Assembly (NCBI GenBank): GCA_950097015.1
Contig: CATNEN010000001.1
Coordinates: forward strand, 8,990,001 to 9,054,000
DNA from: Macrostomum hystrix
Lineage: Eukaryota > Animalia > Platyhelminthes
Direction: 5' to 3'
Length of the DNA stretch: 64,000 bases
Shown here: positions 1,034 through 20,069 of the stretch, piece after piece
How positions within the stretch are numbered: the stretch's first letter is position 1
Layout: each line of letters begins with the position of its first letter
Made by a program: the position numbers and the translations under genes
The notes under the pieces: generated by a model
The model's input: the letters and a program-made list of their open reading frames with translations, nothing else
Database searches by the model: none
Told to the model about the DNA's origin: nothing

Positions 1034-1079
<46 letters not shown>

Positions 1080-1087
1080 CGCAGCCG
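1034..1087 (+). repeat. (CAG)n microsatellite
   Basis: Direct CAG run; homologous to the expanded CAG/PKSE repeat at 28043-28238. Confidence 0.95.
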
Positions 1088-1908: not shown

Positions 1909-2490
1909 TGTTATGTAGTGAACGAAGGGAACAACGGATTTGTTGGCAGATTCCAAATTGAGCAGTTATCCTTTTTGTGATAGCTTTGTGTCCGTATATT
2001 TATAGGTAGCTGATATGTTAAATCGAAAGTTCTAGAAAACACGGACTATAGAAGGTTCTAGAATATTCTGGCTATTCTGGCTACAGAAGGTTCTAGAAAC
2101 TACTAGCTTCCTCACTGCACTACTCATAGTGGCAGTATGCGTAAATTAGCATTCAGTCAGTCAATACACAACATCTTCCCCCTCTCCGCAAAATCAGTCA
2201 GTCAGAAGCCATAACGCTGCACAGGTCGCCTCGGCCGACCGGATCGTCGTACCGGCGGGGTCGCTAGTCCCTGTGCTGGATCCGGTGCAGGCAAGGGATC
2301 TCCGCCTCCATCGTCCGGAACCGTGTGCTGTCCTTGAAAGTCGATGAGCGGGTCGAGCTCGTCAGGCACCGGTGTCTCGGGGCTCAGGCGCATCGATGTT
2401 GGTACGAGTGCCTGCTGATTCCAGGTGCTGCCGTCGGTCAGTCGGCAAGCAGCGCCCATCGTTTTGACGATCCGAAGCGGCGCCGAGAGC
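1909..2490 (-). mobile_element. 3' end of a Gypsy-like LTR retrotransposon: integrase C-terminal tail, PPT and 265-bp 3' LTR (1909-2173)
   Basis: TGTT...AACA termini; minus-strand PPT GGAGAGGGGGAAGA at 2174-2187; ORF 2202..2459(-) ends PPVRRSGRPRRPVQRYGF, a typical Gypsy IN tail; homology with the sister CACTA copy breaks exactly at 1908. Confidence 0.8.
1996..2098 (-). promoter_or_regulatory. LTR promoter: TATA box plus three heat-shock elements
   Basis: TATAAATA on the minus strand at ~1998-2005; nGAAnnTTCnnGAAn arrays at 2025-2037, 2051-2068 and 2086-2098, all upstream in element orientation. Confidence 0.7.
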
Positions 2491-2657
2491 CGAGATATGC
2501 TTCGAATTTAATTTACCCTGCTCCCCCACCCACCACCGCGGGGCGCCGGTGGGCCACCACCGAGGCGTTTGGCCAAACCGTACGCCCCCCCACCGGTGAC
2601 TGGTGGGGCGCGCATAGTGGGGCGTACAGAGGGGCGTATAGTAAATGTCCCACCGGG

Positions 2658-2916
2658 GGGTGGCCGGCCGAGATTCAACGCGGATTCGCCAATGAAGAAA
2701 GGGCCACCAGACGGGAGATGGTCCACGAGGCGGCGGCCACGAGGCGGCGGCCACGAGGCGGCGGCCAGAGGTGTTGGTCGGTGGACCGGCACCGGCACCA
2801 TACCTACTGTTAGCCCGTTTCGGACAAGCGGTGGTAGAATTAGTGGAGAGTTGGTGGCTACCGGAGGCTTTAATGAGAATGGCTCAGAACCCATGAACTT
2901 TGAACCCCCTTTTTAG
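2658..2916 (+). pseudogene. C-terminal part of the conserved small ORF upstream of AlkB-LINE copy 1, truncated by the CACTA insertion
   Basis: GWPAEIQRGFANEERATRREMVHEAAA aligns with GWPAAAQRAFMEEQRATRQDMLHEAAA in ORF 14546..14935. Confidence 0.6.
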
Positions 2917-3139
2917 CGCCACTGCAGGAATGTTTTTACCATGGTTACCCAGGATGCGCCATTGTTGACCAAATGGTCTCTTTTATTCAGCTCACGGACT
3001 ATTTGACTATTATTATTCGCTGACTGATGTTTAACAAGTTGCCTTGTTCTTGTTGTTTAGTGGTATCCTATTTGTTCTTGTAGTTTGTGTTCTTTTTTCG
3101 TTAAAAAGTAAATAAAAAGGACATACCTGTTTTGGATTT

Positions 3140-3541
3140 ACGTGCGGCTGACGGCCAGCCGGTGTTGACCGTCATCCTTTAGCTGGAGGAGAGTGATCTG
3201 CTGTAGACTACTGAGCAGCCTCCAGGCAATCTGTGAGTCAGGCTGTCCTAGGTCTGTGGGAGGGCTGGTGTGTAGGTAGTTTGTGGTTCCCGTGCACATT
3301 CACCTCCGCTCGCCACCCCCTCCTCTTTCTCTCTCTCGTTCCAGCTCTGTCTGCGCACTGAGTCACATTGCAAGCCATGGTGCAATCGCTTCGGTTCGGA
3401 AGAAGACTGGCAGAATATCGCTCAAATGCTCCTACTATAAGTAGAGCACAGTCTGACGAATACGCTGGGTTGTGTTAGCTTTATGGTTGCACAACTTCTC
3501 TACTTTGATGGCACTGTGTGGACTGAAATTTCTTCGTGCGT
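3140..3541 (+). other. Conserved non-coding module upstream of the AlkB-LINE ORF1
   Basis: Homologous to 15232-15518; parts recur at ~14065-14185 and ~11714-11790. Confidence 0.7.
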
Positions 3542-4497
3542 GCCGGATCCTTCCGAATTAGAGGACCTTACAGTCCAGTGAGCGGAAAAATCCAGATAGA
3601 ACCGTATCCAAGCCAGAGTAACACATTTCTGGTACGGTTTTAGGGGCCGCTCAGTTAGCACTCTTACCTCTCTAAGGGGTAACCCTCTATAGTCGACCTA
3701 GGTTAGGCTAGTTCTCTCCTCTCCTTGCCTCCTCTCTAAGAGGAAGCGCCTTATTTCCCTCTCCCCCTGCCTCCTCTCTAAGAGGAGGGCCTTCTCCCTT
3801 TCCCCCTTCCTGCTCCTCCTCCTCTCCCCTTCCTCTCCTCCTCCCCCTGCTACCCTCTCAAAGAGGCTAGCCCCTGTCCCTCTCCTCTGCCCCTGTCCTC
3901 TGCTCCCTGCTACCCTCTTTAGAGGTTAGCCCCTGTTCCTGTCCCTGCCCCTGCTCCCGTCCTCTCGCTTCTCTCTTGCTTCTTTTCTTATTTGTGCATT
4001 ATTTATATTACTTTTAGTTTTATTACAGTTTTAATTGCTGTTTTACTTCACTTTTACTTCATTTATACTGTTTTACTCAATTCAATTTACAGTTTTACAA
4101 TTTATTTGCTCTACTTTTACTGAATTTAATTTGCATTGCTTTATACTACTTTAATCATCATATTTGCATTTACACTACTTTTATTGAATTGAATTAATTT
4201 GCTTTATACTACTTTTATCATCATATTGCATTATATTACTTTTATTGAATTTAAATTGCATTGTTATTTGAATTTAACTGCATTTATACTACTTTTACGT
4301 CAATTGAATTTAATTCGCTTTTATACTACTTATACATTTAATTGCTTACTTTACATTTTACTTTACAGGTTTAATTTACAGGTTTTACTATTATTTACTT
4401 TACTTACTACTTTCATTACTTATCTCACCCTCGTCCCCAGGATTCGGTACCACTTTAAATTTAGCTTAGTTTTTTATTAAATTAGTAAATAGCAACA

Positions 4498-6740
4498 ATG
4501 TCGACTAAACCTAAGCAACCAAAAGACCCAAAGACGACCAAGCCACAGCAGCCACCACCGACTCAGACCAAGCGCAACCTCCGACAATCTACCGACGCAG
4601 TCGCCCAAGCCGCAGCAACCGACAAGAAGCAACGACGCCAATCCGCAGCTCCAACACAAGCCAGCAGCAACACCACTGAGGACACTGAGATGCTTTCTCC
4701 CCCCGCATCCAGTACATCCTCTCCCAACAACACCATCGTCCAAGTCCAAGCCCAAACCCAAGTCCAAGCCCAAGTCCCAGCCCAAATCCAAGCCCAAGCC
4801 CAAGTCCAATTCCAAGCCCAAGCCCAAGCCGACAAGCCGAGCCCAATCAGCAGTCCGAGCGACTCCAATGCTGGTTCAACAACGGCGAGTGCACGCAACT
4901 CCAAAGGTAGTAACTCTTCTTCTTGCACTTCCACATCGTCCAAAAGCCTTGACTTGCTTGCCATCAACAGTCTTGGGTGCTACACCAAATTTCTTATCCT
5001 TGACACCTGTCCAGTCGACTTTTATCCGAACGCCTTCACCAATCTTGCCGATGACCTCCTAAAAACGATCCAGGATGAAATTCTTCTTCTTGCGATCACG
5101 CACCGCTCTCAAGGTCGTCCGGAACTGAGACAAATTGTCTTGTACGGACCTTCTTACTCTTACTCCGGAGAAACCATCCAGGCAAACAACAACTGGCATC
5201 CGATCATCCGCAATCTTGCTCAACTCCTGTCGTCTCGACTTGACTTACCGGCCTTCAATTCTTGTCTTGTCAACGTCTACCGAACCGGCAACGACTTCGT
5301 AGGTTTCCACTCCGACAACGAGCCCGAACTTGGGCGAAATCCAGTCATCGCTTCTCGTTCTCTTGGCGCCACGCGACAATTCTGATTCCGAGCCATCTCC
5401 AACCGAGCAACTCTTCATTCCGAACCTCTTTATCACGGTAGTCGAATCGTCATGCGAGGAGACCCAGTCACTCTGCCAGCACTCCATCATCCAGGACGCC
5501 CGTGTCAAAGGCATGCGAATCAATCTTACCTTCCGAGTCACTTCTCCAGCCATTCAGGACATCAATGACTTTAACCAAGCTCCATCCAAGCCGTCCAATC
5601 CTCTTGACTCTTCCGTCTATGAAGTCGTCGAGGTATGTGACAAAACCATCGTCGAAGAAGACTCTTCTCCTTCTACTTCGCAACGAAAAGGTAATTCTTC
5701 TGTCCATAACAGCCAATTTCCGGATCAGCCTCCTTCAACTTCTACTTCTCAGCCGAAAGGTAACTCCAAGGTCGCTCCTGTACTCTTCCTCATTCCGAAA
5801 TCGACTCTTGACGAGCTTAGGTTCGAGAGGTTTCTTAAGGACAACTTCCCGACCGTTCGCATCAAGTCCGTCCAACGATGCTTCTACTCTTCTGGCTTCA
5901 AGGTCTTTGCTCTTGACTTCCAAGGTTACCAGCATCTTTCTTCCGACGATCTTAAGCATCCAACCATCGATGGCATCGAGGTAGAACGCCGCCTTCCCAT
6001 TCGACGTGAGGACGCCCAGGTCAACTCCAGACGTCTTCCGACCAACATCACGACTCCAAAAGCCTTGTCTTTCATCATCCGTCAGGTATCTCTTGCAACG
6101 GATCTTAAGGACCTTCTCTTGAGAATCCAGACGGTCGAGCCCAACATCTCAGGCATTTTCCGGATCATCTCCTCCTCTTCCAATGAGCCAACTCAATTTG
6201 TCCGAGCCTTCACGACAGACTTAGGTACGCAAGCCCGATGCATTTCCAAAGGCATCCACATCGGGTTCTTCCACTTCCGATGCGAGGCCAGCAGGTCACC
6301 TCCTCCACTAATGGCAACTCAGTGTGGTCATTGGCAGGCATTCGGCCACCATTCCAAGCAATGTGATCGTCGACCTGACGTCCGAGTGCGACAGCGTTAG
6401 TATCCCAGATTTATACATCCGATGCGCCAACTGCAAAGGTCCACACCAGTCAACTGATAAGGCATGTCCGGCACGACGAGCAGCCAACAATCGAGTCCAG
6501 GCATGGGCATCCAAAAATCTTCCTCCTCAGGTCCAACGTCTTCCTCCTCCGATGAGCTACGCCGCAGCTCTAGCTCCTCCTCCACAACAACGCCAAGCTA
6601 TTCCTCCTCTCATGCAAATTCCAACACTGCCGAACAACGACTCCAGCGAGGACTTTCCTTCTCTTCCAAACTCTTTGGTACCAAGGCAACCTTCGGTAAA
6701 CCAGGTTTCTTGCCTTCTCCAAAACGAAGCACTCACACTT
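4498..6740 (+). pseudogene. Non-LTR retrotransposon ORF1 with an N-terminal AlkB (ALKBH2/3-like 2OG-Fe(II) dioxygenase) domain and C-terminal gag-like zinc knuckles; copy 1, disrupted
   Basis: AlkB motifs FNSCLVNVYRTGNDFVGFHSDNEPELG, HGSRIVMRG, QHS and RINLTFR; knuckles QCGHWQAFGHHSKQC and CANCKGPHQSTDKAC; TGA at 5383-5385, frameshifts near 5460 and 6380. Confidence 0.88.
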
Positions 6741-6774
6741 AGACTCACATGGACTGGTAGAAAAGCTTCCTCAT

Positions 6775-7045
6775 CCAAAGGCTGGACAATTCCCGGCTAC
6801 AAATATTGCGGGCCTTTGAATTCGCTTGAAATACAGCTAGATAAAAACAATAATCCAAATCCTGGGCATGAGCCTGTGAACGAGCTAGACTCTGTCTGCA
6901 TGTGGCATGATATCAAGTATAGGGATTTTCCAGAGAAGAATCGCTGGGACAAAGAAATGCTCAGAATGCTAGACAATATGGGGACTTCAAGCGGGTGGAG
7001 GGAATCGATCGCTCGGAAGCTAGTTAAAGCTGTTATTTTTGGTGA
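6775..7045 (+). pseudogene. Parvoviral-type phospholipase A2 fragment (Polinton/adintovirus PLA2-like)
   Basis: GWTIPGYKYCGPLN (Ca-binding loop) and EPVNELDSVCMWHDIKY (catalytic HD); near-identical inverted copy at ~52712-52980. Confidence 0.8.
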
Positions 7046-7476
7046 CTCATTTTACCCCCTCTTATATCAAAAAACTGCTTCGATTCTTCAAATTTGCAAC
7101 CAACTACCCGCTGCTGCTCTACACTGGGTACTCGTTCGAGACTGATGCATCATAAGAAGCATATCGAAGATGAAATGGATCGAGACGAGAACTTCCGGTG
7201 CAAGCTGGCCATAAAGCCAACAGTAATCTACGAGTATGAAACGGAGGCGGCGCTGTGTGAGAAGATGGAAGAAGATCTGTTCAACGATAATGTGTGATTT
7301 GCATAGCTAACCTAAATTAGAACCTTCCTAACATTTTTTTCTGGCTGCCGCTCGTACCATTTTTCGCTAATTGCTTCTTTTCCGGTTTTTTTATTTCTGT
7401 ATTTCTGTATTTCTGTATTTTTAATATCAACTCAAACACACTAGACTTTCCTATCGAGTGAATATTCATTCGATAG

Positions 7477-9790
7477 TGAAATCGGTGGGCCTTTTACAAG
7501 CGCTGACCTGCACTCATGAGAGAAGATTCTTAAGGCGGGCGACAGAGTCCACTTAGATGACCGCTTAGCTACACGCGAGATTTCGCGGAAAGAGAGATGA
7601 GATGAAGGGAGGTTCAGCGGATGCAGGGAGTGGTCCTATCGGCCTCAGACTGGCCAGTCCCACTCGTCCCATAGGCCACAGGCGTGACAGCCGTGCCTAC
7701 CCCAAGCAGTGCTCGAAACCGGCTAAAAGTCTAAGAAGAGAGTCGGACTATCCGTAATCAGACAGGACAGGGCTAGAGAGCCTACTGCCGTCAGTAGCGT
7801 GTAAGTAACTGACTCCTAACCTTGGTAGCGGTGGTCGAAACGGCCCAGGCTCTTGTCACAGAAATGCGGAAAGGCTATTGGCAAAGCGGAAAATGATCTC
7901 AGGTAGCGCCACCACCCAATGCGCCTACGTTGCCACCGCAGACATTTGGGAACTTGGGTCCCCGGAGTACACAGCTCCTAGTTTATCACGCAGATCTAGA
8001 CAAGCCGAAAAAATAGGGCATTCTGCAACTTCCGTTTTAGACTGAGGTGAGAACCCCAGAATGGATCGAGACACGCCTCAAAAGGGGATTCCTGAATTCG
8101 CGCTACAGGGGTCTAGAAAGGTGGTACTCAGAACTCGAATGAAAATCCATAGCCGGAATCCTACTCGTGAAACATCAGGCACATTCTTTACATTAGACTG
8201 CAGCCTACACATTGGGTAACTAACAAATCCGAATCTGTGTGAGATGAGGAAATCAGAGGCAGGAGAGATTAGACAGAACACTGGCTGAGTGGTTACGCAA
8301 GCGCAAGATCATTAGATCATCACTCTCGCTCCCGTGGCGGCAGTCGCGAAAGGGGAATAGGGGAAAACTCCATTGGAAAGGGAGTTCGAACGTACACCTT
8401 GAACCCGCCGGAGAGGTAGAAGGAAAGCCCGCCAAGGATTCCCCCGACCTCCTAGGAAGAAATGCACGTCCTACACTCCGCATTTTGCTCGCAAATCCCT
8501 AGCTCCTTATTACTCTTATGCGCGCTTACAGTTGCCTTCCTGCCGCAGCCTTCGGCTCGGCATCACCAGAACCCGCCCCCCTAGGCGATTAGCCACTCAT
8601 GACCGAGGGCTGTCTAACGATAAAATAACGGTAAAAAGGAGGCATAGTAAAAGAAATTAAGTTGTTGTAAAATTAAGCCCAATAAGTTAAAAGTGCTTTA
8701 GATTAGATAGTTTATTAGGCTAGACAATTCCCTAACTCCCCTCCCACTAAATGCCGCCTAACTAAAGGTAAATTGTCCCTTAGGATTAACAATAATAAAC
8801 CGCTGCGCGGATTACTTAGCTGAACCTCGCTTGGCCGCGTGCTGCAGTCCCGTTGTTCTCGGGGAGAAAGGATGGGCAAAACAGTAAGGCAGAGAAAGGA
8901 AACTTCTGCGAGTTGGCAGGGGCCAACGCACTGGGAGCTCAGAGGCTCAATTTAGAGCTCACCTAAGGAGGTGGCTTGCGCTTAAGGGAATGGAATCAGG
9001 CAATTGGCCTGTACTATCTGCTCGGAGCTCAAGGCTCAAGGGTCTAAGCCCTACGTGGGTCCGGAATAGTGCTCTGGGTCCGGTGGGAGTCCGGCCCGGC
9101 AAAGGGATAGGTCCGGGGAAAGGTAAGGTAGGTCTCCCGGAACGGCCAGGTTGTCCTAGGGGCAGCGCAGCGCGCTTTCTTAAATAGTCCTGCAGCACGC
9201 CAACCCCGACATCCATCAAAGCAACCCACATTCGCGCCAGCCTGTCAACGGGGAATCGAAGCGGCGATGGCCGCCCCGATTACCCAATGAACCGACGGCG
9301 GGAAACGACAGATGTTCTGCTCGAACAGCCGTCGGCAGTCGGCCAATGATTGTTACTCCGCCAGGACAATGGGAAGCGCAGGCGCCGACCTGCCTACAGT
9401 GACATTTACATGTATCTAAAAGAGGGAGGTCATAAAGTCGAGCTGGGCTCGAATACTGTAAAGAAGTGGGAACATGAAGAATTAATGATCACTCATAATG
9501 CCCGAGTGATTCCCAATATCTGATCGCGGTTTGGAGGAGAATTATGACCTAAACTACTCATACAATAAAAGCTATGGCCGCGATCAGTCATTCCTACAGG
9601 GGTCTAGACAGATCCAGGGAGAAGGGATTCGACGGCTACTTAATTCACCGCCGCCCCAAACCCGGCCCTAAGATTAATGATCGTGTTTGCGGCCAGCTGC
9701 TATGTGGGTCGCAATTATTAGGTGCTTAAAAATTTGAAAAATTATGCTGGCTCACATTCCCACTCGATTCCCGCAGCACACTCCACATCA
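7477..9790 (+). mobile_element. ~2.3-kb solo LTR (family X), copy 1
   Basis: TGAAAT...ACATCA termini; 4-bp TSD ATAG (7473-7476 and 9791-9794); no long ORF; TATA-like TTAAATAG ~9180 and AATAAA ~9564; orientation inferred from these motifs. Confidence 0.82.
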
Positions 9791-10008
9791 ATAGGACAAA
9801 ATACACTACGAAAACACACTAGACTTTTCTATCGAGTGAATATTCATTCGATAGGACAAAATACACTACAAAAACACACTAGAGTTTCCTATCGAGTGAA
9901 TATTCATTCGATAGGACAAAATACACTACGAAAACACACTAGACTTTCCTATCGAGTGAATATTCATTCGATAGGACAAAATACACTACGAAAACACACT
10001 TCCTATCG
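9791..10008 (+). repeat. 60-bp tandem repeat (~3.6 copies), interrupted by solo LTR copy 1
   Basis: Unit ATAGGACAAAATACACTACGAAAACACACTAGACTTTCCTATCGAGTGAATATTCATTCG; a partial unit lies at 7434-7476. Confidence 0.9.
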
Positions 10009-10119
10009 AATCTCCATAGTTACTCGCTTGCTAAAGCGTTTGTGTGTCTGTTTTATCTAACGCGTTAGATTTTTTCTGCATATTTGAGTATAGTCTAAAA
10101 CGCTCGAAAAAATAATTAT

Positions 10120-10422
10120 GCAGGCGGTCTGTTCTTAGCACCCAATATCGCAGACATTGTAAAGGGTTTGAATATTCTAATCAGAAGTAATCTCAGTCTT
10201 GATTGGGTATTTAAAGGAAAGCGAACGAATATTTTGTACAACATCTCAAACTCTGTTGCTGGAGGATAGATGCTGGTAGAGAAACCAAATTCAGTGAAAA
10301 GAGTTGTGCTAAGTAATAAGGAGATTCACGAGATTGTGCTGCAGTTTGAGACGGAAGATGGTTTTGGTGTTGATTTCAACGGTGAAGAGTTTGTATTGAC
10401 GTTGATCATTCAGAGAATGTAA
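10120..10422 (+). pseudogene. Polinton/Maverick-like minor capsid (penton) C-terminal fragment
   Basis: Manual translation: NILIRSNLSLDWVFKGKRTNILYNISNSVAGG*MLVEKP...IHEIVLQFETEDGFGVDFNGEEFVLTLIIQRM*; resembles the penton C-terminal D-x-G-x-x-VDFNGE-x-x-LTL motif; one internal stop. Confidence 0.6.
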
Positions 10423-10766
10423 GCTGCTTAATGATTTCTGCAAAGTTATAGTAGCTGTCATAGTCCTTTATAATTACTCCATACTTATGAAACCAGTGAC
10501 TTTTAACTGCTAGATTAATATTAGGGACATTGATATCGACGTTGGGCCAATATTTTCTCATGTACTCGGTGCATTCTAGTTTGCATCGGTATTTACTCTT
10601 GTAATTAGGATTGGGAGCATTTTTAATGAGAATATAATTTTTTTCGGAGGATGAGCACCCTAGGTTTGGGATCTTGAGTTTGGGGATTGGGAATCTGGGT
10701 GTTAGTTTGATTGTCTTGGCACGCTTTTTGCAGGTTCACTATTTTTTCCTGATCTATTCGGGAGTA

Positions 10767-11369
10767 CGAGGGGCGATCAAAAAGTTCTGCAACCAACTGT
10801 TCTATAGCCACTTCTGCTGCACCAAATAAAGTGAATTCCGTGACCGAGGCATCAGTGGCCCGCGCGGACACAATTGTGCCCGAGGATTGCGGTGTGACAC
10901 TGAGATTCCTTGCCTACGAGTTCGGTGTCAACTATGGAAGCGCCCACACCATCATGCATGAGCAGCTGGGCCGCTCCAAGACCTACGCCCGCTGGGTGCC
11001 GCACCTGCTCACAGTGGCACAGTGCGCTGAGCGCGTTCGAATCTGCCGCCTGTGGCTGGAGCTGTTCGAACCAAATGGTCCAAGAAGGCTGCCTGACGTC
11101 GTGACAGGAGACGAATGTTGGATTTCCTTCTTCACGATGAAGGACAAGCAGTCCAACATGGTCTTTTCTCGCATTCAGGACCAAATCAGAACTCGAGAGA
11201 CTACCAACATCAGAGTACCTCAGCTGCTTCCAGGCCTGGCGGATGCGAATGCAACGGTGCACTGAAGCTGAGGGGAAGTACTTTGAGGGAATGCAACACT
11301 GAATGTGTGCTCCAGTTTTCTCAGGACTTTGTAATAACGCAGCTTGCAAAACTTTTTTATCGCCCCTCG
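10767..11369 (+). mobile_element. Internally deleted mariner element
   Basis: TIRs CGAGGGGCGATCAAAAAGTT...AACTTTTTTATCGCCCCTCG with TA on both sides; transposase motifs ARWVPHLLT and VTGDECWI. Confidence 0.9.
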
Positions 11370-12147
11370 TATTAAGGTGGCTGCGATAATTTTCTTGTCC
11401 AAGTTCATAAACTGGAAAGTCGAGAATATGGAGACGGATTTTTATTGGCGGGGACTCTTTTTCCTTCGGGAAGAATAAAGGTAATGGTTTGTGCATTATG
11501 GAGGCTGCGATAATTTTTGTCCTAGATATGCAACTCACAAACTGATGTGGAATATTAAAAGTAGAGAATTTAGAATATAGAGACGGAGTTTTCACGAGAG
11601 AGGCGGGGACCCCTTTTTCCTGATCTCTTCTGGAAGAATAAAGGTAATGGTTTGTACATTATGGAGGCTGCGATAATTTTTGTCCTAGAAGCCCCCTCTT
11701 GCATACTACTAACACCGGATGGTGTTAGCATTATGGCAGCACACATTCTCTACTTTGATGGCACTGTTAGGACTGTTTTTCTTCATGCGTTTTCGTTTTC
11801 GTTTGCCTTTTGCGCTTGCGTTAGCATCAGAGTTAGAAACTGCATTTGAAGCATAGCTTCTAACTTCTTCCTTTTATTGTGTCCAAGTCACCAAGACTAA
11901 GGTACGCTATTTCACTAAGTTGAAAACTCTTCCACACTTAGAGGATCCCCGTGTTCCAAAGTAAGGCCCCGTAACGAGAAGACTACCCAATCTTTAGCCT
12001 GACTACCAGGTTGTTTCCACTGCAAGGAAGCACCAGTGTTGAGGCCGGTGAAATACTCTGAGTCTGGCGTTCCTGTCTTGGTTATTTTCACCAATTGTGT
12101 GTGCCACGCTACCGCAGGTACAACAATACTATTTATACTAAACGATC

Positions 12148-12483
12148 ATGCCTTCACAAGGAGAGGTCCTCCTTCTCTACAAAGAAGCAACAAAGAAAGT
12201 AGAGCACTTTTACGACGAAATCGCTGTTTGGCGTGACACTCTGTTGAAGACGATAGATATCAACGATTTAAGGAAGATACCTAGCAACTACAAGTTTACA
12301 AAGGAACGGGACCTTTTCGATCTTCTAGACAATTGGAACGCTGCAAGAAGCCAGGAAGCCGCGGCTGCTGCAACAAAGCAAATAGGGCTCAAAGCCAGTC
12401 GAAAAAGAAAATTGGAGGAGAAGAAGAGCGAAATATTTTCTAACGTTGTTACCCGAACACAATCGCAAGAGTTGTCTTCTTGA
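12148..12483 (+). CDS. Unknown short ORF downstream of a third copy of the conserved 5' module
   Basis: 111-aa helical, basic ORF; 11714-11790 matches the module found upstream of both AlkB ORF1s. Confidence 0.3.
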   Translation: MPSQGEVLLLYKEATKKVEHFYDEIAVWRDTLLKTIDINDLRKIPSNYKFTKERDLFDLLDNWNAARSQEAAAAATKQIGLKASRKRKLEEKKSEIFSNVVTRTQSQELSS

Positions 12484-13189
12484 CTATTTATTTTTTAAAG
12501 TTGTAAGCGCGTAGTTATGACGCTATAGGCCGCCTGTTCGAATATTCGTACATTGGTGAAGGGCTGTCATTATCAAAAAATATACCGATGAAGTCCATAC
12601 ATTCCTATTATGTTTGATGTCCGTGAGTAACAAGCGAGAAAAAATACAATTGCTTCATGGTTTCAGCAAAGTTATAGTAGCTGTCGTAATCTTATAATTA
12701 CTCCATACTTGTGATACCAGTAGAGAACTAGAGTTTGCATCGGTATTTACTCTTGTAATTAGGCTCGTCCGCTTTGTAATAAGATCCTGGAGAGACGATT
12801 GGAAACATTTTTATTGAGAATTAATTTTTCCAGAGGATGAGCACCCTAGGTTTGGGATCTTGAGTTTTGGGAATCTAGGTGTTAGTTTTATGGATTTTGA
12901 ATCAGAAAGAGAGAAGACTGCTTTCGTCTGGGGGAATCCTCTGATTTGCGGATAAAGAATTTCAAAAGGAGGCGGGGGTTTCCATGATCTCTTCGGGAAT
13001 AATAAGAATACTGGTTTCTGCATTATGGCGACTACGTAAACGTTGTGTCCCAGGATACTATACTCACAGAATACAACTCACAAACTAATCAGGAATATTA
13101 AAAGTAGAGAATTTAGAATATGGAGACCGATTTTTGAGAGAGAGGCGGGAACCTTTTTCCTGATCTCTTGGAGAATAATAAAGTTAATA

Positions 13190-13856
13190 ATAAGGATCTT
13201 TTTTCAAGCTAGCCATTTGACACTGCAGCAGATCGTCGACTACATCTACTGGTGGTCTGTGAGAGTCCGCTTGGACGAAATCTAACGCCAGTGTCGCATC
13301 TCGTCGCGCAATGCTGTTGCCGACTGGAGTAACTTCTGTCGAGACATTTGTGCCCAGTACCTGCTGGATCACTTTGTCGAGCTGGGCGGCCCTGGCCGAG
13401 ATGTCGAAGTAGACGAGTCCGAGTTTTTTCATCGCAAATGTTGGAGCCTACCGCAAAGGCCATTGGGTACTGGGAATGGTGGAGCGCGGCACTCAAAAGT
13501 GTATGATAGTGGTCGTCGAAGATCGACAAGCTGCGACACTACTGCCTGTGATCCAACGTTACGTGCTTCCCGGAACAAGAATCATCACGGATGGTTGGGC
13601 TGCGTACAACGAACGCACTGCCAAATCACGCGTCTGTAAACCACCGGCTCCATTTTGTGGACCCCAGGACCCAACGGTTCATACGAACACTATCGAGGGA
13701 ACGTGGGCGCATTGCAGGGCGAAGTTTCGCAACATGTACGGGACGAGTGACGGTCTATTCGAAACTCGTCTGCAGGAATTTCTGTGGCGCCGTCTATATC
13801 CACGGAATGTGTTTGGCAACTTTCTCTACTGGGTGTCACATTATTATCCCCTCTAA
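13190..13856 (+). pseudogene. Merlin/IS1595-family (ISXO2-like DDE) transposase, frameshifted
   Basis: SHLTLQQIVDYIYWWS; VEVDES; WVLGMVER; TLLPVIQRYVLPGTRIITDGWAAY; HTNTIEGTW; QEFLWRR. Confidence 0.9.
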
Positions 13857-14451
13857 TTATCTTTCTCGTGACTTCGAACTCTAATTTGAACTTTTTTGGT
13901 GGTGGGTTATCTTTTCTGAACTTCTCTGACTACGGTTTGACGTAATCTCTAATAACTTGTCGCTTTTTTTAATTAAAATAATATAACGAAAAAAACATAG
14001 CTATGCCGACAAACTCTATATACAGATTAGTGCAGTACATACGGCCGCTAAAGAAAGCGAATATTATGTGCTGTAGTCTGCTGAGCAGCCTCCAGGCCAT
14101 CTGTGGAGTCAGCGCTGCCCTAGTGCTGTGGGAGGGCTTGGGAGTAGGAAGTCTGCGGTTAACCATGCACACTCACCTCCGCTCCGTTTGTTTCAATAAA
14201 TTGAATTAAAAAATAAATAAAATGTGATTTAAGGGCGATTTTTACATCGTTTACAGCAGGCGGTCAAGCGCCCTGCTGGTACTTCATCCGGGCCGGCACA
14301 TAAAAGACAGCACACGGCTGTGCAGGTGGTGCCTGACACCGCAAACGCCTGCGTACAGGCACGGAGACCAATGATAAGCAGCAGCAGCAGTGGCTCAAAC
14401 GAGGCCCAAGCAGATCCGGATGAGGATCTCTAGGCCGAGTTGCAGTAGGGC

Positions 14452-14935
14452 ATGTCTTCAGACGATGAAGGTATGTCTGATCCTGACTCGGACCAGGAAC
14501 CGGAGAAGTATTTAGAGGCGGAAGGTCCTGCGGCGCCTCCGACGTTTGATTTACCTCTGCCGCAAAGCTCATCATCCAGTGAGGATGCGGAGGAGCCAGG
14601 ACGGCACAGACGGAGGCGCCCAGAGGCGCGCCCAGTGGGGCCTGCGAGCTCCAGAACGGGTGGCGGCCACCCAGGCGGTGGCTGAATCCCTGGCTCGGGC
14701 CGCACGGGGACAGCTGGACGAGGGCTGGCCGGCTGCTGCGCAGCGCGCATTCATGGAGGAGCAGCGGGCAACGCGGCAAGATATGCTTCATGAGGCGGCG
14801 GCTCGAGCAGAGCAGATGGTCGGAGGCCCGGCCAGGACACCAAAGCATCTGGTGGCCCGTTATGGGCAAGCGGTAGTAGAGTTATTAGAGGGGGCGTGGT
14901 ACCCCGAGCCCCTCGTGAGGATGTCAAGATTTTGA
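14452..14935 (+). pseudogene. Conserved small ORF (acidic N-terminus, helical C-terminus) upstream of AlkB-LINE copy 2; probably one frameshift
   Basis: ORFs 14452..14685 and 14546..14935 overlap; the C-terminal part is homologous to 2658-2770. Confidence 0.5.
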
Positions 14936-16174
14936 AGGGTCCGAGGGTTGCCGTCTGACGTTCCGACAGGTCATGAATGTTGTAGTATGTTCTGGCGCCT
15001 CCTTTAGGAATTGCTTACTTATCATGACTGTTGTAGTGTGTTTCTGTTTGTTTTGTTCCTTGTTTTAGGAGTTGTATACTTATTCAGATGAATACGAAGT
15101 AGTTGATTTGTTCTCCTTTCCTTTGTAGTATAAACTTGTTCTGTAGTATCGATCCTTTTGTGAAATATTGTTTTTGAAGAATGGAATTTCTGGTTTAAAT
15201 ATAAGGAAGGAAAGTTACGTGAGTTTTGATCATGTGCGGCTGACGGCCAGCCGGTGTTGACCGTCATCCTTTAGCTCGAGGAGAATGATGTGCTGTAGTC
15301 TGCTGAGCAGCCTCCAGACAATCTGTGGAGTCAGCGCTGCCCTAGTTCTGTGGGAGGGCTTGGGAGTAGGAAGTCTGCAGTTTCCCGTGCACACAATCGC
15401 TCAAATGCTCCTACTATAAGTAGAGCAGAGTCTGACAAATACACCGGATGGTGTTAGCATTGTGGCAGCACACTTTCTCTACTTAGATGGCACATCTAGG
15501 ACTGTTTTTCTTCATGCGTATATTACGTCAGTTTTCGAACCTCTGACCTTTCTCACTTTAGGTGCACGTCCAAGCACAGTGTGTCAAGAAATATCCAGAC
15601 AGAACCGTCTCCAAGCTTGACAAGCTAGTTTATACTCTTGTGAGTAACCCACCCTTAGGGCCTTAGGCTAGGTAGCTTTCCTCCTCCTCCTCCTTTTATT
15701 AGGAGGCTTTTTCTCTCCTCATTAGAGGAGCTCTCTCCCTGCGCCTTGCCGCGCCCCTTGCCCCTTTGCCCCTGCGCCTTAATGCGCCCCTTGCCCGTGC
15801 CCCGCTGCGCCTTGCTGCGCCTGTGCCCCCCCGTCCCCTTGCCTGTGCCCTCTGCCCCCCTTGCCTGTCCGTGCCCCCTTGTCTGTGGACTACGCTTTCC
15901 CACGCGTAACTCCGCTGCGTTAGTCAACCCGTCACCTGTGCTTGGTCCCCTCTCTTCTTTCTCTATCCTTACTCTAGTACCTCTCTCCTGTTCACCTGTA
16001 TCTTGCATCACTCTTCACTCTCTGCTCTACCGACGCGACATCTAGCATTTAGAAATAAAGTTTTAAGGCATTTATGTGCAGTTTTGCGTTTTAATAAATA
16101 AATAAGTAGTATATACAGTTTTATACAGTTTTATTTTAATTAATTTATAAACAATTAGAATAGATAGAATAGAC

Positions 16175-17756
16175 ATGCAGCAAAACAACAACAATAAGAA
16201 AACCCAACACCAAAATCAACAACAACAACAAAAGGACAAGCGCCAACGCCAATCGACCAATGCGACGACCAAGGCTGTCCAAGAACCTGATGACAAAAAA
16301 GCTAGAAGACAATCCAGCCAATCCAGCATACCGAAGCCAATTCAGGCTGAAGCTAGCACAATTCCAAAATCAGCCGACAAAGTAAGTCCAATGGACACCT
16401 CCAGTAATTCCTCCAGTAGGCCTTCTTCAGTAGAACAGGCACAGCCGTCTGAAGGTGTTCCATCTCAATCTCAACCTCAATCTAGCAACTACGATCATCC
16501 TCTTATCTCAACAAAAGGCTTCTTCTCCAAACTCATCATCGGCAACACCTGTCCAATCTCATACTATCCGCACGCATTCAAGGATATCGCCAACGACCTT
16601 CTTACCACTCTTACTGCTGAAATTCTGCCTCTTGACTCACGCCATCACACCAACGGACGAGCTGAACCTCGCAAAATCTTTTGGTATGGCCCGCCTTATA
16701 TGTACTCTGGTGAAACGATCCAGGGCAACTCTAACTGGCATCCGATAGTATCCAATCTTGCTAATCTCCTACACACTCAACTAGGACTTCCAGCCTTCAA
16801 CTCTTGTCTACTAAATTTCTATGAAAATGGCAACGAGTCTATTGGTTACCACTCAGACGACGAACCTGAGTTGGGCCAAAATCCAACAATTGCATCAATC
16901 TCTATCAGAGCACCACGTGAATTTCGCATCCGCTCAAAAGAATCTGGTCTCTCTCTCTCTTCACACAAACTCTTGCACACGGATCGCTTCTCATAATGAA
17001 AGGCGACACCCAAACTCACACACAGCACGCTCTTCCTCGTGATCCATCAATCAAAGATCTCCGCATCAATCTTACCTTCCGCGTCACAAATCCAGCAATT
17101 CACGACATCACAATTCTCCAAGGTCAAGGCAACTCTGACCCTGAGTCAGCTCCTCCAATTCCAAGTCCAAGCAATGATCCAGCCAGCTTCGCTGCTGCTA
17201 CTGCAACATCTGATGGTTACTCCTTTCACTCTGTTGCCGGTTCTCGCCACTCATCACCACGCAACCAATCTCAACCACAAGCCAAGACAGCACCCATACT
17301 TTTCACCTTCACGAACGTTCTCCCGGGGACGAGCTCCGCTTTGAGAAATTCATGAAAGAGAACTTTCCAAATATCCGGATCCGCTCCGTCCAACGGTGTT
17401 ATCTGACAAATGGCTATAAGGTTTTCGCCGTCGACCACCAGGGAGCACATCACCTTCTGACTGATGTGCTCAAAACCAACACCATTGAAGGTCAGGGTGT
17501 TGAGCGCCGCCTGCCCTTGCGCAAGCCGGATGCTCCACCGAACTCAAAGCCACGCCTTCCGACAGCCAGCCACGCGGTCGCCTGTATGCTGGTCCACTTC
17601 GCATATGCCAGTCCTGGGCAGCGAAGCGTGGCTAGCCTAGTTGAGACTGCGGCCAAGCTTGTTGAGGCCATCACCGGCTGGTCATCGCCGGAGCTAACGA
17701 CAGCTGTCATTGCGGAGAGGTGTGAAAAACTTAAAGATGATTTATTAAATTTGTAA
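16175..17756 (+). pseudogene. Non-LTR retrotransposon ORF1 with AlkB domain; copy 2, frameshifted, zinc-knuckle region absent
   Basis: FNSCLLNFYENGNESIGYHSDDEPELGQNPTIASIS, HGSLLIMKGDTQ...QHALP and RINLTFR; downstream ENFPNIRIRSVQRC...GYKVFA...VERRLP aligns with copy 1. Confidence 0.88.
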
Positions 17757-17892
17757 ATTCTTTCGGACAATTGCCGTAGCAAAGCCAAAAATGAAAATAA
17801 AGACTCCCTCCCACTCCCACAAAAAACTAGAAAGGCGAGAGTAACAACAATAACAATTTCAAAGTAGAAGAACTTACCATTCTCCACCTAAA

Positions 17893-19365
17893 TTGCAACA
17901 GTATTCTCAACAAAATCTGGAACTCAATGACTTCTTGAGAGGTCAATACATTGATATAGCCCTCTTCTCAGAGACGGTCCTCACCAGCTCGAACATAATC
18001 TTTTTCCCGGCTACTCCACCATTCGGTTGGACATGCCACACTGTAGCCGAGGTCTCCTCGTGGCCTATAGAGAGTATATCAAACTGTCAGAAGTTAAAGT
18101 CTCGTACTACAATGTCAACCATGAAATTATTTCTTTAAAAGTCCAGACCAGTGACCCATAGCTTGACTTTCTAAACGTCACGCTTATATACAGAAACCCA
18201 AGACATGACAACCTCAACCTCACCCTCCTTGGTTCTCTCCTAACCAATCCCCATAGTCTAATTCTTGGGGACCTCAACTGCCGCTTCAGTGCCCTTGAAG
18301 GCCACAGCAGTGAAAACTATGCAGGGAGACAACTCCTTAGATGGCTAGCCAACCACGACAGCGCGCCAATCATTTTAAATGAACCAGGCGTCCCCACCCG
18401 ATACCTCAGTAGATCTGGCACCCTTACAGGCAATATTCTAGACCTAGGTCTTTGCTCACCAGACTTAGCACCTTTTATCACCGACTTCCAAATCCTAGAC
18501 GATCTTGGCAGTGACCACCTCCCCCTAGTAACCAAAATCGCTGTCAAACCCAAAAATAAACAACCAATTAAACCACCCAGATGTTATAATAAAACTGACT
18601 GGGAACAGTTCCACCTCACACTTGATGACAACATCTCAGCCATCTGGGACAACAACTTCAACCCAAAAACCCCTGCCGAAATTGACAACTCCATTGAAAT
18701 GCTAAACGATATAATTCATCTCACTATAGACAAAGTGGTCCCAAGGTCCTCTCCTAGAGAGACCCTCCCACCCAACATAGTCCAACTCATAAAAGCCCGC
18801 AGAAGGTTTAGAAAATTATTCTACACCACCCGAATTGATGACTTCCGACTACAGGCCAATAAAATGGTAACCCAAATTAGAAACGAAATATGGCACTTTC
18901 GCAACCAAAAATTTAACACCTTATGTGAGAAAATTGCAGACCTTAGTTTAAACCCCAGCAACTCCAAATTCTGGAAAGACATAAAAATTATCATGGGCAC
19001 TAAAACCTAAATCACCCAATTCCCTTCTCTCACCTATCTCAACAAAACTGTCATCACTGATAAGGACAAAGCCAACTTGTTGGCTGAAGCCCTATCAGAC
19101 AAAATGAAACCCAAACCCAGTTCAAACAACAGACTCAGAACCAAGATAGCCAAACACATCACAAATCATCCAAATTTCAAACCTCTAAATCACCTTGAAA
19201 CTCCCAACATCAATGACTCTATCTCACTGCGCCCATCCAAATCGCTGATGTCACCTGGGAACTCGCCCACCTTAGATCAGGAGGAGCCCAAGGTCCAGAC
19301 AACATACCTAACATAGTACTCAAACGGGGCTTGAGCCCCACTACAATAATCTTTCTCACCAAAAG
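17893..19365 (+). pseudogene. Non-LTR ORF2: APE endonuclease and start of RT, decayed and 3'-truncated
   Basis: IDIALFSET, LILGDLNC, NEPGVPTR, ILDLGL, DLGSDHLP (APE); AQGPDNIPNIVLK (pre-RT GPD motif). Confidence 0.85.
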
Positions 19366-20069
19366 TTTAATAAAATATATACTCTTTGAGGGCCCAATTG
19401 ATTAATAACCCCGGTGGGACAGCTTTTTGGGGCGCAGAGTGGGGCGCCGTGCGCCCCGCTATACGCCCAGCCGGCGCCGGGGCGCATGGTGATTTTCCTA
19501 TACGCCTCCCGCCGCCTGGGCGCATAGTGATTTTCCTATACGCCCTTGCTATACACCTCCCGCCGCCTGGGCGCACGGTTTTGTAAACATCACTTTTTAC
19601 GCGGTTTTTTTTCTTTTCGTGTAGTACACGTGACTTATGGTTGCAGAAAAATATTATTTCACCTTTAACATGTCTAGTTGCTCTTAAATTTGGAAATATT
19701 GTTTGCATCATCTTCGAAATTTTCTACTAAATTTTCCAACTTTTTTTTCGTATGCGAAAATATTTGGAGGAAGATTAATTCGCCATGTGCTACTATTAGT
19801 AGAAACGATAGGATACTGTTTCAGTCATATCCTATAGCTCATTCTTTCCGAAAGACCTGCTCATGTAGACTGAAATTATATGACTCTGCATGACAACTTA
19901 GTATAATAGCTAGCTAGTATATAAATTAACATGGTTGCTTCTAATTTTCAATTTCCTCTACATTTATCATAGAGCATAGGGACTCAAAATTCGTCGAGAT
20001 CAATCTGGATTAAGGCAGGTCCCAAAATCGATTCCGTGCCTTCCCTAGAATCCCTAGATTCCCTAGATT

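What the first reader, a model, noticed from the sequence alone, without database searches (positions are those of the whole stretch)
4498..19365. Non-LTR retrotransposon family with an AlkB demethylase fused into ORF1
Seen: two divergent copies (4498-6740 and 16175-17756) place an ALKBH2/3-type domain between a disordered N-terminus and the gag-like region. Copy 1 keeps two zinc knuckles and copy 2 is followed by an APE/RT ORF2. Both retain the HxD...H iron triad and RxxxxxR (HSD, QH, RINLTFR) while flanking sequence has diverged, which suggests past selection for catalysis. Established: ALKBH2/3 remove m1A/m3C, these lesions block reverse transcriptase, and some plant RNA virus replicases carry AlkB. 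Inference: ORF1p coats the element RNA and repairs or demethylates it before target-primed reverse transcription, or counters host RNA modification. I do not recognise this as a standard LINE ORF1 domain, but cannot confirm it is undescribed.
Basis: partly seen in the sequence, partly recalled or inferred. Interest (0 to 1): 0.92.

Follow-up and report, generated by a model that had tools for sequence, protein, structure and literature searches.

The report
LINE coat protein carrying AlkB demethylase
The window holds two dead copies of flatworm jumping genes (LINEs) whose RNA-binding ORF1 protein carries a complete ALKBH3-type nucleic-acid demethylase, and intact, selected copies elsewhere in the genome show the enzyme belongs to the element, a pairing I could not find described for LINEs.

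Summary
Observation confirmed. Both window copies have a Pfam AlkB domain (2OG-FeII_Oxy_2), but both are dead. Copy 1 (3194-6734) has a stop, two frameshifts and no ORF2. Copy 2 (about 15215-19369) has frameshifts, a deletion that removed RRM2 and the zinc knuckles, and an ORF2 cut at the start of the RT.

The genome holds at least 74 AlkB matches. Full-length elements of at least seven families have an unbroken ORF1 (779-1091 aa) followed by an APE+RT ORF2. In six of them (group A) ORF1 reads: disordered N-terminus, AlkB, two RRMs, three CCHC knuckles.

The iron and 2-oxoglutarate ligands are invariant in intact copies. dN/dS on the AlkB domain is 0.03-0.13. The domain is ALKBH3-type by PDB profile (E 2e-43) and by model (TM 0.87-0.90).

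AlkB also heads ORF1 of a second LINE clade with about 25% RT identity. It also heads an R2-type single-ORF element from an unnamed public assembly.

The nearest named proteins are uncharacterised Macrostomum lignano entries. I found no paper on AlkB in LINEs; the closest precedents are an orchid Ty3/Gypsy AlkB and plant RNA-virus AlkB.

The proposed function, clearing m1A/m3C-type methyl bases from the ORF1p-bound template, is inference. Expression was not shown.

This scan had already noted the same fusion on other DNA of this genome.

The parts
3194..4497 (+). Copy 1, 5'UTR
   Evidence: blastn to the intact element: L032 positions 427-4010 match window 3194-6734 at 85% identity. L032/L033 homology begins at L032:423.
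4498..4971 (+). Copy 1, low-complexity (disordered-looking) N-terminus of ORF1
   Evidence: ORF 4498-5385. tblastn places L032 ORF1 aa 1-336 at 4498-5475.
4972..5551 (+). Copy 1, AlkB (ALKBH3-type) domain, broken by a TGA at 5386-5388 and a frameshift at about 5459-5475
   Evidence: Pfam E 5.8e-14. tblastn 4972-5475 plus 5459-5551. Motif positions.
5768..6322 (+). Copy 1, two tandem RRM domains of ORF1
   Evidence: Motifs KVAPVLF at 5768 and FIIRQVS at 6071. Homologous L031 region modelled as two beta-alpha-beta-beta-alpha-beta units. Foldseek matches tandem-RRM proteins.
6323..6467 (+). Copy 1, CCHC knuckle region: knuckle 1 mutated (C to W), frameshift at about 6375-6388, knuckle 3 intact
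   Evidence: and the alignment with intact ORF1s.
6468..6734 (+). Copy 1, part of the ORF1 C-terminal region. Homology ends at 6734 (aa 768 of 891). There is no ORF2.
15215..16174 (+). Copy 2, 5'UTR
   Evidence: blastn: L031rc 74-2180 matches window 15535-17563, and L033 655-827 matches window 15215-15392.
16175..16516 (+). Copy 2, low-complexity N-terminus of ORF1
   Evidence: ORF 16175-16996. tblastn.
16517..17097 (+). Copy 2, AlkB domain, split by a frameshift at about 16951-16978
   Evidence: Pfam E 1.8e-15. tblastn 16517-16978 plus 16954-17097. Motifs.
17290..17576 (+). Copy 2, RRM1, after a second frameshift at about 17325
   Evidence: tblastn places L031 ORF1 aa 391-473 at 17328-17576. 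Motif at 17290.
17571..17750 (+). Copy 2, ORF1 C-terminus, directly after a deletion of about 750 bp that removed RRM2 and all three knuckles (aa 474-718)
17831..19369 (+). Copy 2, ORF2 remnant: APE domain and the first RT residues, with three frame changes and two stops. It is truncated at aa 516 of 950.
   Evidence: tblastn with L031 ORF2. Translation. Pfam on the intact homologue gives Exo_endo_phos plus RVT_1.

Best explanation
The window holds two decayed copies of two related families of APE-type non-LTR retrotransposons from a Macrostomum-like flatworm.

In the live elements ORF1 encodes one polypeptide: a low-complexity N-terminus, a complete ALKBH3-type Fe(II)/2-oxoglutarate dioxygenase, a linker, two RRMs, three CCHC knuckles and a C-terminal tail. 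ORF2 encodes APE and RT. This much is shown.

The rest is inferred. ORF1p binds the element's single-stranded RNA, and possibly the nascent cDNA or the nicked target, through its RRMs and knuckles. That places the tethered AlkB domain on its preferred single-stranded substrate. There it would oxidatively remove N1-methyladenine and N3-methylcytosine-type methyl groups. These block Watson-Crick pairing and stall or derail reverse transcriptases, so their removal would let target-primed reverse transcription copy the full template faithfully.
For: Architecture
- At least 74 AlkB matches in the genome, many inside open frames of 781-1123 aa.
- Seven full-length elements were inspected. Each has an intact ORF1 with a full Pfam AlkB hit (E 1e-18 to 1e-29) and an ORF2 with Exo_endo_phos plus RVT_1.
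- Independent assemblies from two studies carry 2.1-2.4 kb contigs spanning AlkB, RRMs and CCHC contiguously.

Catalytic competence
- NxY, HxD, the distal H and R..R are invariant across families that are only 34-63% identical. The single exception is one decayed copy.

Selection
- dN/dS on the AlkB domain is 0.03-0.13 in 12 within-family pairs, with dS 0.14-0.93.

Subfamily
- PDB profile search: ALKBH3 151 bits (E 2e-43), ALKBH2 97 bits, E. coli AlkB 34 bits.
- AF2 model pLDDT 94. The top Foldseek hits are human ALKBH3 bound to ssDNA, TM 0.87-0.90.

RNA-binding part
- Model pLDDT 80.6 with two RRM folds, and tandem-RRM proteins as top hits.

Recurrence
- AlkB also sits at the N-terminus of ORF1 in a second LINE clade (L038 family, RT about 25% identical).
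- It also sits at the N-terminus of an R2-type single-ORF element, P0085.

Established knowledge (from memory and as cited in PMC9246332)
- ALKBH3 repairs 1-meA and 3-meC in single-stranded DNA and RNA.
- These lesions block base pairing.
- AlkB treatment is used to let RTs read through m1A/m3C in tRNA sequencing.
Against: - No enzymatic, expression or retrotransposition data. No run on record as RNA held the element.
- The substrate (RNA or ssDNA; m1A/m3C or another mark) is not determined by sequence.
- About 36 other intact LINE ORF2s in the same genome, at 32% or lower RT identity to the query, have no AlkB hit within 6 kb (one search compared). The function is therefore not generally needed for LINE mobility.
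- Two ORF2-intact relatives (C37:439239, C31:2481891) have no AlkB hit upstream. I could not inspect them.
- Sense-strand A+C richness (0.54-0.61 against 0.52 for the window) is only weakly suggestive and was not compared with AlkB-less LINEs.
Confidence: 0.55

Rival explanations
1. Counter-defence or epitranscriptomic erasure. The AlkB domain removes a host-installed regulatory mark (m1A, m3C or m6A) that would otherwise target the LINE RNA for decay, sequestration or silencing. In this reading it does not repair RT-blocking damage.
For: - The orchid Ty3/Gypsy AlkB is an active m6A RNA demethylase, and its authors propose exactly this role (PMC9289625).
- m6A affects L1 mobility in mammals (PMC7873242).
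- The selection and catalytic conservation fit this reading as well as repair.
Against: - The domain is ALKBH3-type, not ALKBH5/9/10- or FTO-type, and ALKBH3's best-established substrates are m1A and m3C.
- No evidence that this host marks TE RNA in this way.
Confidence: 0.2
2. The enzyme acts on something other than the element's own RNA. Candidates are the DNA target or ssDNA intermediates, for example 3mC made as a by-product of DNMTs in methylated TE or rDNA chromatin. Host RNAs at the insertion loci (rRNA, 5S, U5 snRNA) are another candidate.
For: - ALKBH3 works on ssDNA (structures 8JNK/8JNR are the top hits).
- DNMTs create 3mC, and Macrostomum keeps DNMT1/3 and ALKB2 (PMC9246332).
- Several AlkB-LINE families sit in multicopy RNA-gene arrays: U5, the 5S spacer and the rDNA spacer.
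Against: - The two window families and the L038 family are not visibly tied to RNA genes. No Rfam or tRNA hit in the window, and none in L032, L033, L034 or L038.
- Fusion to an RNA-binding ORF1p argues for RNA or a nascent hybrid as the substrate.
Confidence: 0.12
3. The AlkB fold is kept as a non-catalytic nucleic-acid-binding or assembly module of ORF1p.
For: None specific. Many captured domains lose their activity.
Against: All metal and 2OG ligands are invariant in intact copies across families at 34-63% identity. They are lost only in a decayed copy, L005, where H became L. dN/dS is about 0.1.
Confidence: 0.04

Closest known systems
Type I ORF1p of APE-type LINEs (RRM(s) immediately upstream of CCHC knuckles; I, Jockey, R1, Tad1, plant L1 and some L2/CR1; Khazina & Weichenrieder typology as summarised in PMC4120745)
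   Same: Two RRMs followed by three gag-like CCHC knuckles, upstream of an APE+RT ORF2. The ORF2 C-terminal region resembles Jockey-type elements by eye; that comparison is from memory and was not tested.
   Different: A complete enzymatic AlkB domain lies N-terminal of the RRMs. The typology lists RRM, CCHC, coiled coil/CTD, PHD and esterase, but no dioxygenase.
Orchid (Phalaenopsis) Ty3/Gypsy Ogre-like elements encoding an AlkB protein (PMC9289625)
   Same: A retrotransposon that has fixed an AlkB-family 2OG dioxygenase. That protein binds RNA and is catalytically active in vitro, and a proposed role is action on the element's own RNA.
   Different: That element is an LTR element in a plant. 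Its AlkB sits at the C-terminus of a separate extra ORF and resembles the AlkB proteins that demethylate m6A in RNA. Here the element is a non-LTR element in a flatworm, the AlkB is fused in-frame to the RNA-binding ORF1p, and it is ALKBH3-type.
AlkB domains in replicases of plant RNA viruses (Alpha-/Betaflexiviridae, Closteroviridae; cited in PMC9289625)
   Same: A selfish RNA-templated replicator carries an AlkB domain. It removes methyl lesions from RNA in vitro and is thought to keep the template intact.
   Different: Those are RNA viruses with an RdRp, and the AlkB is embedded in the replicase polyprotein. Here the AlkB domains group with eukaryotic ALKBH3-like sequences.
Human ALKBH3 (PDB 2IUW, 8JNK, 8JNR)
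   Same: Best sequence and structure match: 34-36% identity, TM 0.87-0.90, with the same Fe and 2OG ligands.
   Different: ALKBH3 is a stand-alone cellular repair enzyme. From memory, it relies on the ASCC3 helicase for single-stranded substrate. Here the domain is tethered to RRMs and knuckles of a transposon protein.
Esterase (SGNH) domain of CR1/L2 ORF1p (PMC3905857)
   Same: The only other well-described enzymatic-type accessory domain in a LINE ORF1.
   Different: It has a different fold and chemistry (lipid or ester hydrolase-like) and is not a nucleic-acid-modifying enzyme.

Membership tests
AlkB family, ALKBH3 subfamily, of Fe(II)/2-oxoglutarate dioxygenases | Pfam 2OG-FeII_Oxy_2 match above the gathering score | tested here: met
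   The window pieces score 53 and 58 bits against a cut-off of 31.2. Intact ORF1s score 68-105 bits.
AlkB family, ALKBH3 subfamily, of Fe(II)/2-oxoglutarate dioxygenases | HxD...H iron triad, plus the 2OG-binding NxY and RxxxxxR motifs | tested here: met
   Invariant in all intact copies. Present, but separated by frameshifts, in both window copies.
AlkB family, ALKBH3 subfamily, of Fe(II)/2-oxoglutarate dioxygenases | Double-stranded beta-helix fold with a nucleotide-recognition lid, closest to ALKBH3 | tested here: met
   AF2 model pLDDT 94.2. Foldseek top hits are ALKBH3 at TM 0.87-0.90, then ALKBH2 with a similar TM score but lower sequence identity and a weaker E-value, then AlkB at about 0.71. 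HMM scores are 151, 97 and 34 bits respectively.
AlkB family, ALKBH3 subfamily, of Fe(II)/2-oxoglutarate dioxygenases | Oxidative demethylation of 1-meA/3-meC in ssDNA or RNA | not testable with these tools
   Needs a biochemical assay.
APE-type non-LTR retrotransposon (LINE) | ORF2 with an apurinic-like endonuclease followed by a reverse transcriptase | tested here: met
   Exo_endo_phos(_2) plus RVT_1 in six full-length elements. An APE and RT-start remnant follows copy 2.
APE-type non-LTR retrotransposon (LINE) | Multicopy and dispersed, with intact and degraded copies and no LTRs | tested here: met
   At least 74 AlkB matches and 109 RT matches on many contigs, with identical and decayed copies. 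No LTR-like repeats appear in self-comparisons of L035 and L037 beyond the host array units.
APE-type non-LTR retrotransposon (LINE) | Target-site duplication and a defined 3' end | tested here: inconclusive
   An 18-bp overlap of the 5S spacer unit flanks the L035 element. A conserved 3' module ends the elements without a poly(A) tail. The window copies are 3'-truncated, so they have no ends to check.
APE-type non-LTR retrotransposon (LINE) | Assignment to a named clade (Jockey, R1, CR1 and so on) by RT phylogeny | not tested
   No reference RT set (Repbase/RTclass1) was available. Only internal comparison was possible: group A families share 40-87% ORF2 identity, and the L038 family shares about 25% with them.
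Type I LINE ORF1p | At least one RRM immediately upstream of CCHC zinc knuckle(s) | tested here: met
   Two RRM folds followed by three CCHC motifs. Definition taken from PMC4120745.
Orchid Ty3/Gypsy AlkB elements | LTR retrotransposon with AlkB in a separate additional ORF, of the kind that demethylates m6A in RNA | tested here: not met
   There are no LTRs. The AlkB is fused in-frame in ORF1 of a LINE and is ALKBH3-type.

The most novel reading that the evidence does not exclude
Base methylation of single-stranded nucleic acid (m1A/m3C, whether damage or host-installed) is a natural barrier to target-primed reverse transcription. At least three structurally different LINE lineages have answered it by fusing an ALKBH3-type eraser to their RNA-coating or RT protein: type-I-ORF1 elements, the L038 type, and an R2-type single-ORF element. 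The eraser would then be required for their mobility. That would be the first transposon-encoded nucleic-acid repair or demethylation activity in non-LTR elements.
Probability: 0.35. Interest if true: 0.85.

Novelty: new variant of a known kind. Interest (0 to 1): 0.74.

Why it matters
LINE ORF1 proteins are regarded as RNA chaperones or packaging proteins. The only described enzyme-like accessory domain is an esterase.

A conserved, selected nucleic-acid demethylase tethered to ORF1p implies that methylated bases on the template or intermediates limit LINE copying in at least some hosts. Plant RNA viruses and one orchid LTR element arrived at the same solution.

The hypothesis is directly testable with young, intact elements in a flatworm genus whose model species, M. 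lignano, can be cultured and made transgenic:
- an in vitro demethylation assay;
- a catalytic-dead retrotransposition assay;
- m1A/m3C mapping on LINE RNA.

The elements are also a natural source of an RRM-tethered ALKBH3-type enzyme.

Tried and rejected
Tools that gave nothing or were unavailable
The source organisms of the unnamed Logan proteins P0002, P0008, P0011, P0014 and P0085 are therefore unknown.
I could not inspect two ORF2-intact relatives without an AlkB hit (C37:439239, C31:2481891), nor the flanks of the L038-family copies.
- The word-indexed protein searches returned only one hit each, and the ESM Atlas gave nothing usable. Given those tools' limits, these blanks say little.

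Expression
- The eight runs that hold the element are recorded as DNA or of unknown kind. Only contigs were available. This gives no verdict on transcription.

Origin of the domain
- The trees place all type-I-ORF1 LINE AlkBs in one clade (SH-aLRT 97-98) and the L038 group in another. Both lie within a eukaryotic ALKBH3-like assemblage.
- An AU test does not reject a single clade (p 0.31). One capture versus two is unresolved. The careful tree did not finish, so only quick trees are reported.
- Host AlkB-like genes (L043, L044) were used exon by exon.

Other ideas
- Sense-strand A+C richness as a sign of vulnerability to m1A/m3C: values of 0.54-0.61 are not distinctive without AlkB-less controls. 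I dropped it as evidence.
- The conserved 3'UTR module gave only a sub-threshold Rfam hit (RAGATH-11, 27 bits against 79) and one covarying pair. I do not claim it as a known RNA family.
- LINE clade naming was not possible without reference RTs.

Rejected readings
- Host-gene exon or assembly artefact: rejected by multicopy intact ORF1+ORF2 elements and by independent contigs.
- ALKBH5/FTO-type m6A eraser: rejected by the profile and fold ranking.

Full report
**What is in the window**

The region holds two same-strand remnants of non-LTR retrotransposons. Pfam finds 2OG-FeII_Oxy_2 (AlkB) in ORF pieces 4498-5385 (E 5.8e-14) and 16175-16996 (E 1.8e-15). The NxY, HxD, distal-His and RxxxxxR motifs lie at the positions listed.

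I compared the window with intact relatives found elsewhere in the genome.
- Copy 1 is window 3194-6734. It matches L032 positions 427-4010 at 85% identity. It has a 1.3-kb 5'UTR, one stop (TGA at 5386-5388) and two frameshifts (about 5459-5475 and about 6375-6388). It ends inside ORF1 at residue 768 of 891, and no ORF2 follows.
- Copy 2 is window about 15215-19369. It matches L031 at 75-82% identity. Its ORF1 has two frameshifts and a deletion of about 750 bp that removed RRM2 and all three knuckles (aa 474-718). Its ORF2 has two stops and three frame changes and is cut at residue 516, just as the RT begins.

The two copies belong to different families, about 66% identical in DNA over the AlkB region. 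Both are dead. The interesting object is the family rather than these copies.

**Intact elements**

A six-frame search of the whole assembly (220 Mb, 42 contigs) with the copy-2 AlkB segment gave 74 matches. Many lie in open frames of 781-1123 aa. I fetched eleven loci.

Seven full-length elements have an unbroken ORF1 of 779-1091 aa with a full-length AlkB hit (E 1e-18 to 1e-29). Six of these seven were scanned for ORF2 domains, and each has an ORF2 of 950-1153 aa with Exo_endo_phos and RVT_1.
- L032 and L033 are the family of copy 1.
- L031 is the family of copy 2.
- L034, L035 and L037 are further families with the same layout.
- L038 is a different kind (see 'Breadth and origin').

Contigs from independent public runs in two studies span AlkB, RRM and CCHC contiguously, 2.1-2.4 kb at about 98% identity. 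The fusion is therefore not an artefact of this assembly.

**Anatomy of ORF1**

The alignment of the seven ORF1s shows this order:
- a low-complexity N-terminus;
- the AlkB domain;
- a variable linker rich in Ala, Ser and Gln;
- a conserved block of about 250 residues;
- a variable tail.

An AlphaFold model of the conserved block has mean pLDDT 80.6. It shows two beta-alpha-beta-beta-alpha-beta units followed by three CCHC motifs. Foldseek matches tandem-RRM proteins such as Pub1, U2AF65 and HuR with probability 1.00. This is the Type I ORF1p layout, an RRM directly upstream of CCHC, as defined in the typology summarised by PMC4120745. The AlkB domain is added at the front.

**The AlkB domain is catalytically complete, ALKBH3-like and under selection**

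Across ten AlkB domains that are 34-93% identical, N-x-Y, H-x-D, the distal H and both Arg of RxxxxxR are invariant. The one exception is a decayed copy, L005, where H became L. The same positions are invariant when 31 cellular homologues are added.

A profile of the LINE domains scores human ALKBH3 at 151 bits (E 2e-43), ALKBH2 at 97 bits and E. coli AlkB at 34 bits. The AF2 model has pLDDT 94.2 and pTM 0.90. It superposes on human ALKBH3-ssDNA complexes at TM 0.87-0.90 with 34-36% identity.

Nei-Gojobori dN/dS on the AlkB domain:
- 0.06-0.13 among four copy-1-family members (dS 0.33-0.56);
- 0.10-0.11 among three copy-2-family members (dS 0.74-0.93);
- 0.03-0.09 in the L037 family.

Along L032 against L033, the values are 0.09 for AlkB, 0.04 or less for the RRMs and knuckles, and 0.36-0.37 for the linker and tail. 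Both fail to refute.

**Breadth and origin**

The L038 family has at least five copies with identical scores on five contigs. It carries AlkB at the N-terminus of an ORF1 that lacks recognisable RRM/CCHC. Its ORF2 is only about 25% identical to the others and ends in a CCHC motif, so it belongs to a different LINE clade.

A full HMMER scan of 1.84 billion representative proteins found 15,970 AlkB relatives.
- The top scorers are 350-960-aa proteins with an N-terminal AlkB.
- The named ones are uncharacterised Macrostomum lignano proteins ('Fe2OG dioxygenase domain-containing protein').
- Four unnamed Logan proteins (P0002, P0008, P0011, P0014) carry AlkB plus the RRM/CCHC block at 30-36% identity.
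- A 1787-aa Logan protein, P0085, has an N-terminal AlkB, C2H2 fingers, an RT, a CCHC motif and a PD-(D/E)xK-like tail. That is an R2-type single-ORF LINE. It has no close relative in this genome.

In quick maximum-likelihood trees, all type-I-ORF1 AlkBs form one clade (SH-aLRT 97-98) and the L038 group forms another (98-99). Both lie within an assemblage that holds animal ALKBH3 (emu, a nemertean) and this genome's own spliced AlkB-like genes. That assemblage has 92-94 support and is separate from the roughly 200-aa sequences that look bacterial. An AU test does not reject a single LINE clade (p 0.31). One capture versus several remains unresolved.

AlkB is not general to LINEs in this genome. 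An RT search shows a tier at 42% identity or higher, which consists of the AlkB-bearing group, and then a gap to 32% or lower. In that lower tier about 36 intact ORF2s have no AlkB hit within 6 kb (one search compared).

A host exon (L043) is 81% identical to an M. lignano protein, and the L037 ORF1 is 61% identical to M. lignano P0005/P0153. The genome is therefore a Macrostomum relative rather than M. lignano itself, and the fusion predates their split.

**Mechanism**

Shown:
- one polypeptide joins a catalytically complete ALKBH3-type domain to the RNA-binding modules of a LINE ORF1p;
- the domain is under purifying selection in several lineages.

Established, from memory and from PMC9246332:
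- ALKBH3 removes 1-meA and 3-meC from single-stranded DNA and RNA;
- these adducts block pairing and polymerases.

Inferred: ORF1p coats its own RNA in cis and holds the eraser on the single-stranded template, or on nascent cDNA or the target flap. This would keep the template readable for target-primed reverse transcription.

Rivals:
- erasure of a host regulatory mark, as proposed for the orchid Gypsy AlkB (PMC9289625);
- action on DNA or on host RNAs at the insertion loci;
- a non-catalytic role, which is unlikely given the invariant ligands.

No expression evidence was obtained.

**Novelty**

Five full-text searches and the 448-element ORF1 survey gave no report of AlkB in a non-LTR element.

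The closest precedents are an orchid Ty3/Gypsy lineage with a separate AlkB ORF active on m6A, and plant RNA-virus replicases. Repbase and Dfam could not be queried. The M. lignano proteins are public but carry only automatic names.

I class this as a new variant of a known kind: accessory-domain capture by retroelements, and AlkB in selfish RNA-templated replicators.

Earlier notes of this scan describe the same fusion on other pieces of this genome. My tests agree with them.

**Limits**

- The careful tree did not finish.
- Host genes were compared exon by exon without a joined model.
- Broken window ORFs were searched as separate pieces.
- The parvovirus-like PLA2 fragment was only observed.

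Noticed in passing
window 6777-7028 (+), directly after copy 1 ends at 6734: Parvovirus-type phospholipase A2 motif (Pfam Phospholip_A2_4, E 2.8e-13; YKYCGP at 6798, WHDIKY at 6903). It lies by chance in the same frame as the LINE remnant. It looks like a short endogenous densovirus-like VP1 fragment. I observed it only.
   Followed up: partly
L037 (G000:C12:3676000-3685999); also C29:3.90-3.93 Mb and C1:13.53-13.54 Mb: One AlkB-LINE family stands in head-to-tail arrays with a 6512-bp period. The first element follows a complete U5 snRNA gene (Rfam U5 at L037:2144-2262). The repeat unit restarts inside U5, at position 49. This is consistent with repeated insertion at a U5 site with a long target duplication.
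   Followed up: partly
L035 (G000:C39:12720000-12729999): Another AlkB-LINE family is inserted in the spacer of a 5S rDNA array (unit 926 bp; 5S genes at 174-292, 1100-1218, 8915-9033 and 9842-9960). An 18-bp overlap of the unit lies at the two junctions. A second copy lies 10.6 kb further along the same array.
   Followed up: partly
L031 (G000:C17:35000-44999): The only intact member of the copy-2 family lies about 3 kb upstream of the 5' end of an 18S rRNA gene (Rfam SSU at L031:1-380, minus strand), in the same orientation, on a 130-kb contig. This is probably the rDNA spacer. A duplicate lies on C42.
   Followed up: no
L055:1501-1706, L061, L066 and nine other loci (3' ends of elements): A 3'UTR module of about 125-190 nt is 82-97% conserved between LINE families whose proteins are only 40-60% identical. 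RNAalifold predicts a long-range helix plus three hairpins, with only one covarying pair. The only Rfam hit is sub-threshold (RAGATH-11, 27 bits against 79, minus strand). It may be the RT recognition element. The elements have no poly(A) tail.
   Followed up: partly
L038 (G000:C1:8051000-8060999); identical-scoring copies on C9, C11, C38 and C39: A young LINE of a different clade (RT about 25% identical to the others; ORF2 of 1153 aa ending in a CCHC motif). It also starts its ORF1 with AlkB, but the rest of ORF1 has no recognisable RRM/CCHC.
   Followed up: partly
protein P0085 (Logan assembly, organism unknown): A single 1787-aa ORF with an N-terminal AlkB (all ligands present), C2H2 fingers, RVT_1, a CCHC motif and a PD-(D/E)xK-like tail. 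This is an R2-type LINE carrying AlkB. It has no close relative in this genome.
   Followed up: partly
window 8300-9792, 38323-39814, 42817-44304, 47277-48718: Four copies (77-94% identity) of a 1.5-kb repeat that also lies directly upstream of the L034 element (L034:1-1494). The repeat was not identified.
   Followed up: no
L039 (G000:C10:304-308 kb) and C41:369-372 kb: Tandem intronless ORFs of 360-421 aa with an N-terminal C2H2-like zinc finger and a C-terminal AlkB domain (Pfam E 1.9e-13). No RT lies nearby. Their relatives are M. lignano 'C2H2-type domain-containing' proteins. They may be host genes or domesticated pieces.
   Followed up: no
L032 against L033 ORF1: Synonymous divergence is about 0.42 over the N-terminus, AlkB and linker, but only 0.05-0.10 over the RRMs and knuckles. 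This suggests recombination between subfamilies within ORF1.
   Followed up: no
window 14062-14184: An isolated fragment of about 120 bp, 80-84% identical to the first bases of the copy-1-family 5'UTR (L032:425-533). It lies 1 kb upstream of copy 2.
   Followed up: no
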